From positions 33,604,001-33,668,000 of the forward strand of contig NW_026889750.1 in NCBI RefSeq assembly GCF_033153115.1: a DNA stretch of 64,000 nt, given 5' to 3'. This document shows positions 52,389 to 61,348 of the stretch, in pieces. Every line of letters begins with the position of its first letter. Position 1 is the stretch's first letter. The notes beneath the pieces are model-generated. The model saw only the letters and a program-made list of their open reading frames with translations. It was not told the origin of the DNA and made no database searches. The position numbers and the translations under genes were made by a program. The DNA is from Saccostrea echinata. Taxonomy: Eukaryota.

Positions 52389-55300
52389 TTATTTTACCAA
52401 AACGCTCGTAAGAGACAAAACAACAGTCACTAAGTTGGCTATTATATAGACAGACGATGACTTCATATTGCCCCTTTGAGCCTCAAACTTCTGGTAACTA
52501 TATTTCTCCCTGCTGCTTGCTTCAAGATCAACAGAAATAGAAGCAACGCAACTTCCTCTTTTTGACGTACTCTTGGAGAAAGGTACACGTGGTAAATCCT
52601 CTGTATTTACTTCCATTGTAACGGAAGTGACGTTCACATTTTTGCTGCTTGCATTGCTATATTCACACTCTATGCGGTCAAAGTCGAGTTCACTTTGAGG
52701 AAACTGCATAGAACCGAAAGTCACGGGACAGGTGAAGTCTCCGTTAGATTCCGAAGAGCATGGCGTAATGAGTTTGGTCCGCTGGTACCAATACACTTTC
52801 CCGGTAGACTCTATGGTCAGAAAGCGGGGATTGATTAGTACTTGTGGCTGCGACTCCCTACAAAAGTTAAAAGAGTATACGTAAAGTGTCTAATTGACAT
52901 CCAGTCAAGATTTGTTTACTTGTAATATCAGGCCCTTACAAAGCTTTTTCAGATTGAGAGGGTACTTAATGCTAAGAGGGTAAAGCACTTTAAATAATTT
53001 GAGAAGCAGAAGGAAAAGAATATGCCCATCGTCCCATGATTGGTAACTTTCACTTCGTGGGGCTAAGGACGAGGTTTAGTTCCTCGTAATATCTAACAAA
53101 TACTGAGCAAGACACTGGTACCGATCTCGCTTGAATGATTTTGACCCCTAATACCGGTATATATCAAAGACAGAATCATATTTTTTTTAACCCTTAGTGC
53201 TAGTATATACATGTATTTCCAAGACTGCTATTTTGACCCTTAGTACCGGTATATATCAAAGACTGATATTTTTACCCCTACTACCGATATACTAGTATAT
53301 CAAAGACTTATATTTTTACCTTTAGTACCGGTGTATATCTATAAGTCTTTCACATATATACTAAGAGTCTGGTGTCTCTGGAGCGAAAGATACCCTCTCC
53401 CGTTTCCTACGACTATTGATAACGTCCTTTCATTTAGGATAAACAAATTTTGGAATGAGGATATACATGCAAGGGAGTGTAAGTAGATTGTGATATGGGT
53501 TGCCTTGTTTTGAGTGTTTCATAAGCATAATAGGAATGTTTTTGAAACGGTGCTTACATATTTAGGAAATATACATCAGGTGTCCACACTTCAGTACTGT
53601 TGACTGTTACATGCTTAATGATGTCAGAGTACCAGTAAAGTCGCCCGTCAACCCATTGCTGAAATGTAAGATTCTATAGTGTAAGCTCAAATAATTTGTA
53701 TCTTGTTTTAACTCATAACTTTTCGACACATAACAGACATTACAGGTTTCGTAAACTTATCAAACTAAATAGAGCGGATAGTTTATTATGCCATCCTGTA
53801 TTTTCTTTGAATATAACAAGCCTCATATCTACTGTATACAACTTCAATTTTTCATATAACTTTCACTATTTACACACTTAAGAAAAAGCCACAAATGAAA
53901 CATGAAGTTAACTTAGCAATAAACAAAATACATGACCTAACACATATTTGAGGCTTCTCTCTTCTTTTAAAATTCCGAGAAATAAGCGCAAATATACACT
54001 ATGAAGCTTTTAACTGAATTGTACTCACAAATCGGGTGTCCACTATGGAAGTCATACTCGGAATCTCGGGGTCTACCTTTAGAACTTTTACAAAATCAAA
54101 TCGAACATTCACCAGGAGCGGACTAGAAGACTCGTTGTAGGGCCGGAAATGCTTATTGTACTTTAGAAAGGCTGTCGTAAAGACGTTTGAAGTTTCAGCA
54201 ACGTAGCTCTTCTGTCCAAATGTTCCAGTTAATCTAAATATAAAGATTTAGATCTATAATTGGTTCAATGCTACCTGTTCAAAAGAATAACCTGTTCGCC
54301 CTAACTTAACTTTTAAAGTAGCAAACAAAAACAAAACAAAACCAAAGAAAAAACACTCAAATATAAGAAAAGGTATCATGTTTGTAATGGAGTAAAGAAG
54401 CTGCAAACAGACATTTTAGATATCCCAGTCTTGAAAATGCATGTAAGTATAAAAATGTCAAATGTTTTGAGTTCACATCTACTGAATTCATGTATTTGAA
54501 ACTAAGCTATAAACATACATTGTAGGCTATGATCCAATATTCAAATATACGTAAGTATCAGATACAATAATACTTTTCGGGCTTTTATACTTCACCCTCT
54601 CTCCGATGTTGCAAAAGCTTCTCATGTCTATCTTAATATCAATTAAGAATTAACTAAGAAGGATAAAAACTTTGTTTTAGTCAATAAACACTTTGATAAC
54701 AAAGAGGGTTTTACCAGCTCAACATTGCTGTGAATGATTACCAATTCTCTGACTTTTGGAGTACAGAGGATCTAGTGTTGGAATTTTCATAATTGGTCCG
54801 CTCTCAGAGACGTCAAGATTTTTAGTGAGTTTTTTCTATAATAAAAAAAATGTACTACCCGACAATATGATTTCCCTAGCCTATTTAAACAATTATTTTA
54901 ATCTTTTCTCATCGTGAACATATTGGTTGGATGATGTAAACTGGGGTAATGCATCGTGCGTAAGCACTGTAGGAAAATATATATATATACGTTTTCTCGA
55001 AACAAAATACATTAGTAAATGGCATCTTTTATCCTAGAAGACATGTGTATTTTATATAAGCATGGCTAATAACTGAGATGTTGCAGCTCTAATAAAATAT
55101 TAATCGTCATTATAAAAATAAAGAAATAAAAAGCAAATAAAATTAAACAAATTTTAATTATCAATAATCTCATTTTAGGATCATGAAACGATTAATAAAT
55201 ATTCAAGTACATTAAAGTTATATGAGAATGAAAATTTCCACCACCCCACACGTTGATAGCAATAACTATTTTTTTTTTCAATCAAGGCAAAAATAATCGT

Positions 55301-60728: not shown

Positions 60729-61348
60729 GAATACCAGATTAAACAGATTGGGATTAAACTAAGATGAGCGACTTATATTGGTAAAAAAATAATGTTTAAT
60801 TAAAGCTTTATTATCACGTTTCAAGCATCTTAGTTTCCTGCACGGTTTACAATTAGGCACATGTTACACCAATTAATATTTGCTTAATAACAAGTGGTTC
60901 CTGTGGTGCTGTCGTTTCGAGATTCTAGACCCATTAATGACTAGAGCAATTTTCAAGATTCTTCACATCAAATAGATCCTATATTTGCCGTTAGCATTGA
61001 AACCTGCTGCGATTTTCTGTGTTTCGTCTGTTTATTTTAGGGATATACATGTGTTTTTTCCGCATTTCTACATGCATGTTTGGCTATCAAGATGCATGTT
61101 ATGTATTTCCTTGATATTATCAAGAACTCATAAATTTGCTTTGAAGTTAACTATATATCATAATTTCCTTCATGAGACATTTAAAGCAATACTTTTATTA
61201 TATTAAAATTAATTGTTCTACTTTTATTACCTTTACGAAGCTTTGAACATAGATTAACTTTCCTGATGATAATTCAGAGTAGTCGAAACATAAAACATAT
61301 TTCTTACCTTGAAAACAATCCTAAGAAAAGAAAAATATACACGTCCAT
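52389..61348 (-). CDS. Cys-loop (nAChR/AChBP-like) ligand-binding-domain-only protein with hydrophobic C-terminal tail, 4 exons, ~271 aa
   Basis: Exons 61308-61348 (signal peptide MDVYIFLFLGLFS, phase 2; least certain), 54029-54233, 53558-53658, 52389-52857; GT-AG introns, 816 nt in frame. LBD hallmarks: KYNKHFRP..PLLVNV..VLKVD, QWVDGRLYW, EVWTPDVYFLN, GKVYW..PC-x9-CPVTFGS. Confidence 0.85.
53137..53340. repeat. Minisatellite (~40-45-bp units) in the last intron of the Cys-loop gene
   Basis: About five degenerate copies of ttttgacccctagtaccggtatatatcaaagac. Confidence 0.6.
56770..57062. repeat. Tandem duplication of a ~155-bp unit
   Basis: cacgcct..acatcagagtta..aaaccagtaca..tcaagcaaaagtagtaa..ccattgaca..gatcat.accacttt occurs twice. 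Confidence 0.6.
58608..58750. other. Assembly gap (N run)
   Basis: Run of n characters. Confidence 0.99.

What the first reader, a model, noticed from the sequence alone, without database searches (positions are those of the whole stretch)
52389..61348. Channel-less Cys-loop ligand-binding domain with a candidate GPI or single-helix anchor: a membrane-tethered AChBP-like protein
Seen: the spliced ORF has a signal peptide, a complete pLGIC-type extracellular domain (YNKHFRP, WVDGRLYW, WTPDV, C..C-PVTFGS) and four N-glycosylation sequons (NES, NST, NAS, NVT). A polar spacer (EASSREKYSYQKFEAQRGNMKSSS) and one hydrophobic stretch (VYIIANLVTVVLSLTSVLVK) follow, ending at the stop. No M2-M4 exons are visible before the next gene. 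Known: receptors have four TM helices, while molluscan AChBP and pearl-oyster ACCBP are soluble and end after beta-10. Inference: small residues plus a terminal hydrophobic run resemble a GPI-addition signal, and 'YIIANL' also resembles the start of M1, so an M1 remnant may have been repurposed as an anchor. This would be a third architecture, a surface-tethered non-conducting LBD acting as a decoy, sensor or biomineralisation scaffold.
Basis: partly seen in the sequence, partly recalled or inferred. Interest (0 to 1): 0.85.

Follow-up and report, generated by a model that had tools for sequence, protein, structure and literature searches.

The report
Membrane-tethered channel-less receptor domain in oysters
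This oyster gene is real, expressed and conserved; it encodes only the outer ligand-binding half of a neurotransmitter-gated channel, ending in a short greasy tail that looks like a signal for a lipid (GPI) anchor, so it probably sits on the cell surface and binds something without conducting ions.

Summary
Observation confirmed. A four-exon minus-strand gene (61348-52389) encodes a 271-aa protein: signal peptide, a complete Cys-loop ligand-binding domain (LBD), a polar spacer, an invariant Ser-Ser-Ser, then 20 hydrophobic residues and a stop.

- **Transcripts.** Contigs from 4 runs in 2 studies show all three splice junctions. They run unspliced through the stop codon, so nothing splices on to channel exons.
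- **No channel part.** No transmembrane-domain exon exists anywhere in the 64-kb window.
- **Assembly gaps.** Both are non-coding: one lies in intron 1, the other in or after the 3'UTR.
- **Orthologues.** Saccostrea, Ostrea, Crassostrea-like oysters, Pinctada, scallops and mussels all have the same short architecture. None has M1-M4, and the family forms a 100/100 clade apart from this genome's full receptors.
- **Fold.** It matches AChBP (TM-score 0.80-0.83). The Cys-loop is shrunk to 6-11 polar residues, and the loop-B Trp and loop-A Tyr are lost, so acetylcholine is an unlikely ligand.
- **Tail.** The features fit a GPI signal better than a transmembrane helix, but no GPI predictor or experiment was available.
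- **M1 remnant.** This idea has no support.

A 2019 survey already counted "LBD-TM" gene models, so this is a new variant of a known kind. The scan also holds a sister note on this window's binding site (s1-803404).

The parts
61308..61348 (-). Exon 1: ATG at 61348 and 13 codons plus 2 nt of a hydrophobic signal-peptide-like N-terminus
   Evidence: translation. The loose end at 54235 equals the reverse complement of this exon's 3' end. Identical to residues 1-13 of P0031 and P0007.
54234..61307 (-). Intron 1 (GT..AG); contains the assembly gap 58608-58750
   Evidence: Splice sites. Orthologue tiling leaves no residues missing between exons 1 and 2. The exon 1-exon 2 junction is seen in a transcript contig.
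54029..54233 (-). Exon 2: N-terminal helix and beta1-beta2 of the LBD, with sequon NES at 54136-54128
   Evidence: PF02931 positions 4-47; contig pieces 54029-54235.
53558..53658 (-). Exon 3: WxDxRLxW and WTPD motifs (loop D and loop A region), with sequon NST at 53601-53593
   Evidence: PF02931 positions 56-91, 25.7 bits; joints on both sides.
52389..52857 (-). Exon 4: second half of the LBD (beta6-beta10), spacer, tail and stop
   Evidence: PF02931 positions 104-202; contigs colinear from 52856 to 52267.
52728..52760 (-). Shortened polar Cys-loop, C-x9-C (canonical receptors have C-x13-C with an FPFD-type motif)
   Evidence: The loop is 6-11 residues and polar in all family members (alignment A2).
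52707..52709 (-). Met at the loop-B position that holds the cation-pi Trp in nAChR and AChBP (FGSW becomes FGSM)
   Evidence: HMMER alignment to AChBP/alpha7 chimeras. The position varies across the family: M, F, K, N or Y.
52665..52667 (-). First Cys of an extra, family-conserved cysteine pair
   Evidence: Nearly invariant column C180 in A2; coordinates.
52548..52550 (-). Second Cys of the extra pair (start of beta10); the only fully invariant column of the family alignment
   Evidence: Invariant column C219 in A2; coordinates.
52647..52655 (-). Sequon NAS
52626..52634 (-). Sequon NVT; the Thr is nearly invariant in the family
   Evidence: T193 nearly invariant.
52461..52523 (-). Polar, charged spacer of 21 residues between beta10 and the small-residue triplet; a low-confidence helix in the model
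   Evidence: helix 227-245, pLDDT 45-58. It is 56% identical among oysters, against 77% for the LBD.
52452..52460 (-). Ser-Ser-Ser, the candidate GPI omega site, 22 residues before the C-terminus
   Evidence: Invariant in all 12 oyster sequences; 100% against 51-56% for its flanks; omega scan.
52392..52451 (-). C-terminal run of 19 uncharged, mostly hydrophobic residues plus a terminal Lys: the candidate GPI signal tail (alternatively a transmembrane helix with no cytoplasmic part)
   Evidence: There is no significant match to the receptor TMD profile.
52389..52391 (-). Stop codon TAA, transcribed and not spliced out
52267..52388 (-). 3'UTR up to the edge of the assembly gap; no AATAAA or ATTAAA within it
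   Evidence: The contigs end 17-48 letters inside the gap.
52135..52266 (.). Assembly gap downstream of the stop (letters not read, not filled)

Best explanation
The gene encodes a secretory-pathway, N-glycosylated, channel-less Cys-loop ligand-binding domain of 271 aa. It is held on the outer face of the plasma membrane by a GPI lipid anchor.

Proposed mechanism:
- The N-terminal signal peptide takes the protein into the ER.
- The AChBP-type beta-sandwich folds there with two disulfides and probably assembles into a ring, as other members of the superfamily do.
- The C-terminal signal is a small-residue triplet (SSS) followed by about 20 hydrophobic residues with no cytoplasmic extension. GPI transamidase would cut it off and replace it with GPI.
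- The roughly 21-residue polar spacer acts as a stalk.

There are no M1-M4 helices, and the Cys-loop is reduced to a short polar hairpin, so the protein cannot gate or conduct ions. The loop-B Trp and loop-A Tyr are replaced and loop C has no vicinal cysteines, so the ligand is probably not acetylcholine.

The most likely role is a surface-bound binder: a sink, decoy or presenter for an unidentified small ligand. A phospholipase could release it.

**Shown:** the gene model, its expression, the lack of a channel part, the fold class, conservation of the architecture across pteriomorph bivalves, and the pocket substitutions.

**Inferred:** GPI attachment, oligomerisation, ligand and role.
For: - **Transcripts:** the spliced form is present in 4 runs from 2 studies and runs through the stop.
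- **Copy number:** the locus is single-copy.
- **No TMD exon:** none in the 64-kb window with a profile built from this genome's own receptors. PF02932 matches listed elsewhere in the genome do not include the window.
- **Domain:** orthologue P0031 has PF02931 at 78 bits and no PF02932.
- **Fold:** the AF2 core has pLDDT 85-93, and the top Foldseek hits are Lymnaea AChBP with TM 0.80-0.83. The best PDB sequence hits are AChBP and alpha7 chimeras at E 1e-9.
- **Conservation:** the same LBD + spacer + small triplet + hydrophobic C-terminus occurs in Saccostrea cucullata, Ostrea edulis, Pinctada imbricata, Ylistrum balloti, Mizuhopecten and Mytilus.
- **Phylogeny:** the family is a 100/100 clade whose branching roughly follows bivalve phylogeny.
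- **Tail, short runs:** in mussel, scallop and Pinctada members the hydrophobic run is only 13-17 residues and is preceded by a polar 5-7-residue spacer. That is too short for a bilayer-spanning helix.
- **Tail, omega site:** a small-residue triplet lies 20-26 residues from the C-terminus in every complete member.
- **Tail, C-terminal end:** at most 0-3 residues follow the hydrophobic run.
- **Conservation pattern among oysters:** SSS 100%, LBD 77%, spacer 56%, tail 51%. This is what a cleaved signal would show.
- **Polymorphism:** of 5 variants seen in the transcripts, 4 are synonymous.
Against: - No GPI predictor (NetGPI, PredGPI, big-PI), SignalP or TM predictor could be run, and there is no biochemical evidence.
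- In the oyster clade the tail is 19-20 uncharged residues (mean Kyte-Doolittle hydropathy about 2.3, my hand calculation). It could span a membrane, and it follows the SSS with almost no polar omega+3 to omega+9 spacer.
- Some oyster tails end in a basic residue (K, RI, KM), as a stop-transfer signal would.
- Within oysters parts of the tail are conserved (L-x-L-T).
- Oligomerisation is unsupported: the homodimer prediction gave no verdict.
- The tissue of expression is unknown.
Confidence: 0.6

Rival explanations
1. Same channel-less LBD, but anchored by the terminal run as a single-pass type I transmembrane helix with essentially no cytoplasmic tail.
For: - Oyster tails have 19-20 uncharged residues of transmembrane-grade hydrophobicity, and some end in K or R.
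- SMART/TMHMM-type surveys call such models 'LBD-TM' (PMC6896357, Table 1).
- AF2 draws the tail as a helix.
Against: - Mussel, scallop and Pinctada members have only 13-17 hydrophobic residues.
- No member has a cytoplasmic segment.
- The only invariant feature near the tail is the small-residue triplet, not the helix.
- GPI signals are routinely called as TM helices by TM predictors (general knowledge).
Confidence: 0.25
2. The protein is in effect soluble, like AChBP or ACCBP. The tail would be a removed propeptide or a weak anchor, and the functional form is secreted into haemolymph or extrapallial fluid.
For: - All characterised LBD-only relatives (AChBPs, and Pinctada ACCBP as described in PMC3128620) are soluble.
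- GPI proteins are often shed.
Against: The hydrophobic C-terminus is conserved across the whole family. That would be hard to explain if it had no membrane role.
Confidence: 0.07
3. A truncated receptor: a pseudogene, or an incomplete model whose M1-M4 exons are hidden in the 52135-52266 gap or further downstream.
For: - A gap lies 123 nt after the stop.
- 'ttg|gtaaaa' at the stop looks like a splice donor.
Against: - Contigs from 4 runs read straight through that site and the stop.
- No TMD-like open frame exists in the window.
- An estimated 132-nt gap cannot hold about 230 residues of TMD.
- Orthologues from other assemblies and transcriptomes end at the same place.
- The ORF is intact in many genera, and variants are mostly synonymous.
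Confidence: 0.02
4. The main product is a chimera in which the first ~190 residues of the LBD are spliced to the downstream neighbour (window 49536-50291), as in the Gnomon models P0012 (Ostrea edulis) and P0059 (Crassostrea angulata).
For: Two independent automatic gene models in two genera make this fusion.
Against: - No such joint appears in the four runs laid here, and the neighbour has its own contigs reaching 50437.
- The fusion would cut the beta-sandwich after beta7-beta8.
- The same species also have the 271-276-aa form.
Confidence: 0.03

Closest known systems
Molluscan acetylcholine-binding proteins (Lymnaea, Aplysia, Bulinus AChBP)
   Same: - Signal peptide plus a pLGIC-type LBD with no channel domain.
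- Best structural matches: Foldseek TM 0.80-0.83, E 1e-15.
- Best PDB sequence matches: E 1e-9.
- The Cys-loop is polar and not built for TMD coupling.
   Different: - AChBPs end after beta10 and are soluble. This family adds a ~21-residue spacer, a small-residue triplet and a hydrophobic C-terminus.
- The aromatic box is not kept: loop-B Trp becomes Met, loop-A Tyr becomes Leu, and there is no vicinal Cys-Cys.
- There is an extra conserved Cys pair.
- The Cys-loop has 6-11 residues rather than 12.
- Sequence identity is only 16-19%.
Pinctada fucata ACCBP (amorphous calcium carbonate-binding protein)
   Same: A bivalve, AChBP-like, channel-less LBD protein, as described in PMC3128620.
   Different: ACCBP is described as an extrapallial-fluid (soluble) protein.
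Full-length nicotinic-type pLGIC subunits of the lophotrochozoan expansion
   Same: The LBD is homologous: PF02931, and the receptor HMM aligns over positions ~12-226. The genome holds at least 154 TMD matches.
   Different: - No M1-M4.
- No 13-residue Cys-loop with an FPFD motif.
- A multi-exon gene, whereas the own-genome receptor loci fetched here mostly have single open frames of 355-510 aa.
- A separate clade on a long branch.
'LBD-TM' domain combination counted by Jiao et al. 2019 (PMC6896357, Table 1)
   Same: The architecture is an LBD followed by one non-pLGIC hydrophobic segment. That table counts 2 in C. gigas, 8 in P. f. martensii, 3 in M. yessoensis and 5 in B. platifrons.
   Different: The paper gives only a count from automatic gene models. 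It does not address transcripts, orthology, GPI versus TM, the pocket or the Cys-loop. I could not check whether its entries are members of this family.
Lynx1/Ly6 prototoxins (GPI-anchored modulators of nAChRs)
   Same: GPI-anchored, non-conducting cell-surface proteins of the cholinergic system (PMC8771676).
   Different: An unrelated three-finger fold. They bind receptors rather than resembling the receptor's LBD. This is an analogy of logic only.

Membership tests
pLGIC ligand-binding domain superfamily (Pfam PF02931 Neur_chan_LBD) | Significant match to the LBD profile over nearly its full length | tested here: met
   The exons hit positions 4-47, 56-91 and 104-202 of 216. The 93%-identical orthologue P0031 scores 78.2 bits against a cut-off of 26 over positions 4-202.
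pLGIC ligand-binding domain superfamily (Pfam PF02931 Neur_chan_LBD) | N-terminal helix plus ten-strand beta-sandwich fold | tested here: met
   The AF2 model has helix 24-38 and beta strands 53-225, with core pLDDT 85-93. Foldseek gives TM 0.80-0.83 to AChBP.
Functional pLGIC receptor subunit | Four transmembrane helices M1-M4 (PF02932) | tested here: not met
   There is no PF02932 hit in P0031, P0018, P0023 or P0028. No TMD-like frame exists in the window. The transcripts end after the stop.
Functional pLGIC receptor subunit | Cys-loop of 13 residues with the hydrophobic FPFD-type motif that couples to M2-M3 | tested here: not met
   C-x9-C here, polar. The loop is 6-11 residues across the family.
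AChBP (soluble acetylcholine-binding protein) | LBD only, with no channel domain | tested here: met
AChBP (soluble acetylcholine-binding protein) | Soluble: the chain ends shortly after beta10 with no hydrophobic segment | tested here: not met
   A 21-residue spacer, SSS and a 20-residue hydrophobic C-terminus are conserved family-wide.
AChBP (soluble acetylcholine-binding protein) | Aromatic box: loop-B Trp, loop-A Tyr, loop-C Tyr-x-Cys-Cys | tested here: not met
   The alignment to AChBP/alpha7 chimeras gives FGSW to FGSM and LLYN to YFLN. Exon 4 has no Cys-Cys dipeptide. Loop C itself was not aligned residue by residue.
AChBP (soluble acetylcholine-binding protein) | Homopentamer | tested here: inconclusive
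   The homodimer prediction returned 'no answer'. Five copies could not be modelled.
GPI-anchored proteins | N-terminal ER signal peptide | tested here: inconclusive
   A hydrophobic N-terminus is encoded by exon 1 and conserved in orthologues. SignalP was not available.
GPI-anchored proteins | C-terminal hydrophobic tail reaching the end of the protein with no cytoplasmic domain | tested here: met
   Hydrophobic runs of 13-20 residues are followed by 0-3 residues in all complete members.
GPI-anchored proteins | Small residues at omega and omega+2, about 20-30 residues from the C-terminus, after a flexible polar linker | tested here: met
   SSS, NNA, NSA, NNG, SNG, GAS or AAS lies 20-26 residues from the end in every complete member. 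SSS is invariant among oysters. This was my own rule-based scan, not a trained predictor.
GPI-anchored proteins | Moderately polar omega+3 to omega+9 spacer before the hydrophobic core | tested here: inconclusive
   Clear in mussel, scallop and Pinctada members (such as RQTIQQ, RLHLE, YRVLD). In the oyster clade the residues after SSS are already mostly hydrophobic.
GPI-anchored proteins | Release by PI-PLC, or a lipid moiety detected | not testable with these tools
   Needs an experiment.

The most novel reading that the evidence does not exclude
An ancient family, spanning all Pteriomorphia, of GPI-anchored ring-forming Cys-loop ligand-binding domains with a re-engineered, non-cholinergic pocket. 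This would be a genuine third architecture of the pLGIC superfamily, beside channels and soluble AChBPs. It would work as a lipid-raft surface receptor, decoy or ligand presenter, and it would show that the LBD was recruited at least twice for channel-independent functions.
Probability: 0.45. Interest if true: 0.72.

Novelty: new variant of a known kind. Interest (0 to 1): 0.6.

Why it matters
The pLGIC superfamily is known in two forms: channels, and the soluble AChBPs that gave the field its first atomic picture of the binding site. A conserved, expressed, lipid-anchored LBD with no channel and an altered pocket would be a third way of using the domain. It would open an unexplored ligand class in bivalves, animals with more than 100 nAChR-like genes of mostly unknown function.

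There are two practical points:
- Databases currently name these proteins 'acetylcholine receptor subunit alpha-like', 'GABA receptor subunit epsilon-like' or 'GABRA'. Those names are misleading and inflate receptor counts.
- A small, glycosylated, probably ring-forming LBD on a flexible stalk could be a convenient structural surrogate, as AChBP has been.

Tried and rejected
- **Complex prediction,** two copies of the LBD (residues 22-232 of P0031): 'no answer', score 0.00. This is neither support nor evidence against oligomerisation.
I could not fetch orthologue DNA, so there is no dN/dS and no direct synteny. Synteny is inferred only from the chimeric models P0012 and P0059, which fuse the LBD to the same neighbour as in the window.
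- **Joined spliced protein.** Exons were searched one by one by reference, and the 93%-identical database orthologue P0031 stood in for the whole protein in the Pfam, AF2, Foldseek and PDB searches.
- **M1-remnant idea: rejected.** The receptor LBD+TMD HMM gives only a -4.2-bit, E 3.1 non-match on the tail.
- **Hidden TM exons: rejected**.
- **Own-genome paralogues:** none. The next best hits are full-length single-exon receptors at 69 bits or less.
- **Spurious hits.** Several hits of the representative search (P0015, P0017, P0019, P0020, P0022, P0026) are repeat or Big_2-like proteins and were discarded. P0014 looks like a garbled read-through.
- **Literature searches** for a GPI-anchored AChBP-like protein found nothing relevant.
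- **Protein-atlas neighbours** were only leads, with scores of 0.89 or less.
- **Gap letters.** Read laying printed a 17-letter loose end running into the 52135-52266 gap. I did not use it.
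Full report
**What is there**

On the minus strand, four open pieces with GT..AG introns give a 271-codon reading frame:
- exon 1: 61348-61308
- exon 2: 54233-54029
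- exon 3: 53658-53558
- exon 4: 52857-52389

- the four N-x-S/T sequons, at 54136-54128, 53601-53593, 52655-52647 and 52634-52626
- the polar spacer, 52523-52461
- the Ser-Ser-Ser, 52460-52452
- the terminal 20-residue hydrophobic run, 52451-52392
- TAA at 52391-52389

Each exon on its own hits Pfam Neur_chan_LBD (PF02931) in colinear order. Exon 2 covers profile positions 4-47, exon 3 covers 56-91 and exon 4 covers 104-202 of 216.

Exons were searched by reference. For whole-protein analyses I used the database orthologue P0031 (Saccostrea cucullata XP_062595783.1, 271 aa, 93% identical in exon 4).

**Assembly gaps (tested first)**

The four exon translations tile P0031 at 1-13, 16-82, 83-115 and 117-271. 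The residues between the pieces are the split codons. No coding sequence is therefore missing.

The gap at 58608-58750 lies inside intron 1. The exon 1-exon 2 junction is seen directly in a transcript contig: the loose end at 54235 is the reverse complement of the end of exon 1.

The gap at 52135-52266 starts 123 nt after the stop. Transcript contigs reach its edge and stop 17-48 letters inside it. I neither filled nor used those letters.

**Is it expressed, and does it splice on to channel exons?**

Five public runs from two studies hold about 39% of the words of 52300-54300, close to the exonic fraction. Four of them (X1-X4) were laid on 49400-55300. Each gives one contig of 937-1129 nt with joints 52856/53557 and 53658/54029 (CT..AC on the plus strand, GT..AG on the minus). 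Each contig is colinear from 52856 through the stop, and through the donor-like 'ttg|gtaaaa', down to 52267.

The genome has a single copy of this DNA and protein. The intron-less contigs are therefore mRNA and not a processed copy.

I built a profile from 14 of this genome's own full-length receptors (LBD plus TMD) and ran it without filters on all six frames of the whole window. It finds only exons 2 and 3, plus exon 4 weakly, and nothing TMD-like. The genome has at least 154 PF02932 matches, and none of those listed falls in the window.

**Relatives**

Word-indexed and exhaustive HMMER searches find a very small family: 21 hits at E<=1e-3 among 1.84 billion representatives, several of them spurious repeats. 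Named members (plus for Ostrea and Mizuhopecten) come from:
- Saccostrea cucullata (271 aa)
- Ostrea edulis (272 aa)
- Pinctada imbricata (332 aa)
- Ylistrum balloti (282 aa)
- Mizuhopecten yessoensis (partial)
- Mytilus galloprovincialis and M. edulis (218-228 aa)

Unnamed transcriptome members have 271-284 aa.

Every complete member has the same plan: signal peptide, LBD, polar spacer, a triplet of small residues, and a hydrophobic C-terminus. None has PF02932.

In a maximum-likelihood tree of the LBD, the ten full-length members form a 100/100 clade on a long branch. They are separate from 22 full receptors sampled from this genome. The internal order (scallop, mussel-like, Pinctada, oysters) roughly follows bivalve phylogeny.

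The architecture is therefore old and vertically inherited, not a recent truncation. Of five variants seen among the transcript contigs, four are synonymous.

**Fold and pocket**

AlphaFold2 on P0031 with the family alignment gives an N-terminal helix and a ten-strand sandwich, with core pLDDT 85-93 and an overall mean of 73. A low-confidence polar helix, a loop at the SSS and a low-confidence hydrophobic helix follow.

Foldseek's best PDB matches are Lymnaea AChBP and alpha7-AChBP chimeras: E about 1e-15, target-normalised TM 0.80-0.83, 16-19% identity. The best sequence matches in the PDB are the same proteins at E 1e-9.

Those alignments show three changes:
- The loop-B Trp of FGSW is Met here. 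Elsewhere in the family it is F, K, N or Y.
- The loop-A Tyr is Leu.
- Exon 4 has no Cys-Cys.

The Cys-loop has 9 residues here and 6-11 across the family. It is always polar and never has the 13-residue FPFD type that couples to M2-M3. A second cysteine pair is conserved; its second member is the only invariant column in the family alignment.

This agrees with the scan's sister note s1-803404. It argues that the protein neither gates a channel nor binds acetylcholine in the canonical way.

**GPI signal or transmembrane helix?**

No GPI, signal-peptide or TM predictor was available, so this rests on inspection and simple scripts. Four points favour GPI:
1. Nothing follows the hydrophobic run except 0-3 residues in any member.
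2. In mussel, scallop and Pinctada members the run has only 13-17 residues. It is preceded by a polar 5-7-residue spacer and a small-residue triplet (NNA, NSA, NNG, GAS, AAS). This is the textbook omega / spacer / tail layout, and it is too short for a bilayer-spanning helix.
3. In every complete member a small triplet lies 20-26 residues from the C-terminus.
4. Among six oyster orthologues, mean pairwise identity is 77% in the LBD, 56% in the spacer, 51% in the tail and 100% at SSS. A cleaved signal with a constrained cleavage site would show this pattern.

Four points argue for caution:
- In oysters the tail has 19-20 uncharged residues.
- It follows SSS with little polar spacer.
- It sometimes ends in K or R.
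- It keeps an L-x-L-T motif.

I put GPI at about 0.6 and a tail-less transmembrane helix at about 0.25.

The idea that the tail is an M1 remnant has no support. The receptor HMM aligns the family only over LBD positions up to about 226, and the tail begins about 25 residues beyond beta-10.

**What is known**

Jiao et al. 2019 (PMC6896357, Table 1) counted 'LBD-TM' and 'LBD' domain combinations among molluscan nAChR-like gene models. Examples are 2 LBD-TM in C. gigas and 8 in P. f. martensii. They did not analyse them further.

Searches for a GPI-anchored AChBP-like or Cys-loop LBD protein found only Lynx/Ly6 papers and unrelated work. Public annotations call the family members receptor subunits or hypothetical proteins.

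I therefore rate this as a new variant of a known kind. The sequences and a bare domain count exist. What is new:
- recognising a conserved, expressed family with GPI-type tails
- the degenerate Cys-loop
- the rebuilt pocket

**Limits**

- Complex prediction gave no verdict.
- Run identities are coded, so the tissue of expression is unknown.

**Verdict**

The M1-remnant idea and the claim of an entirely unseen architecture are not. Interest is 0.6.

Noticed in passing
window 49536-50291 (-), transcribed to at least 50437: The downstream neighbour is a 251-aa ORF with no Pfam match. It carries three copies of a D-[DE]-V-x-[SD]-I-V-[DE]-R-L motif and is expressed in runs X2-X4. NCBI automatic models in Ostrea edulis (P0012) and Crassostrea angulata (P0059) fuse the first ~190 residues of the LBD gene to this protein. 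The fusion may be a read-through isoform or a model artefact. No such joint was seen here.
   Followed up: partly
window 51627-51971: A roughly 345-bp repeat has very high summed depth in the transcript contigs (700-2400, against 20-100 for the gene). It shows many variant letters and sharp loose ends at 51626/51627 and 51971-51973 in all four runs. It looks like an abundant short interspersed or MITE-like element lying between the two genes.
   Followed up: no
window 51175-51290: Dinucleotide microsatellites (TA- and TC-type runs, read as YIYIYI and SLSLSL in ORF lists) sit next to the repeat. Read laying skipped 51172-51289 as repeat.
   Followed up: no
window 61470-61560 (-), 5' of the start codon: An upstream ATG-initiated short ORF resembles the N-terminal extension of S. 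cucullata 'isoform X1' (P0030, 312 aa). Here it is closed by a stop and out of frame with the main ATG. The 5'UTR probably carries a uORF, and the long isoform is not available in this genome.
   Followed up: partly
genome G000, e.g. C9:697244-756364 and C54:19787366-19861533: There are dense tandem arrays of intron-less full-length pLGIC genes (open frames of 350-510 aa) and at least 154 PF02932 matches genome-wide. This is the lophotrochozoan nAChR-like expansion.
   Followed up: no
window 60693-60737: A poly-T tract about 45 nt long (minus-strand reading) lies inside intron 1.
   Followed up: no
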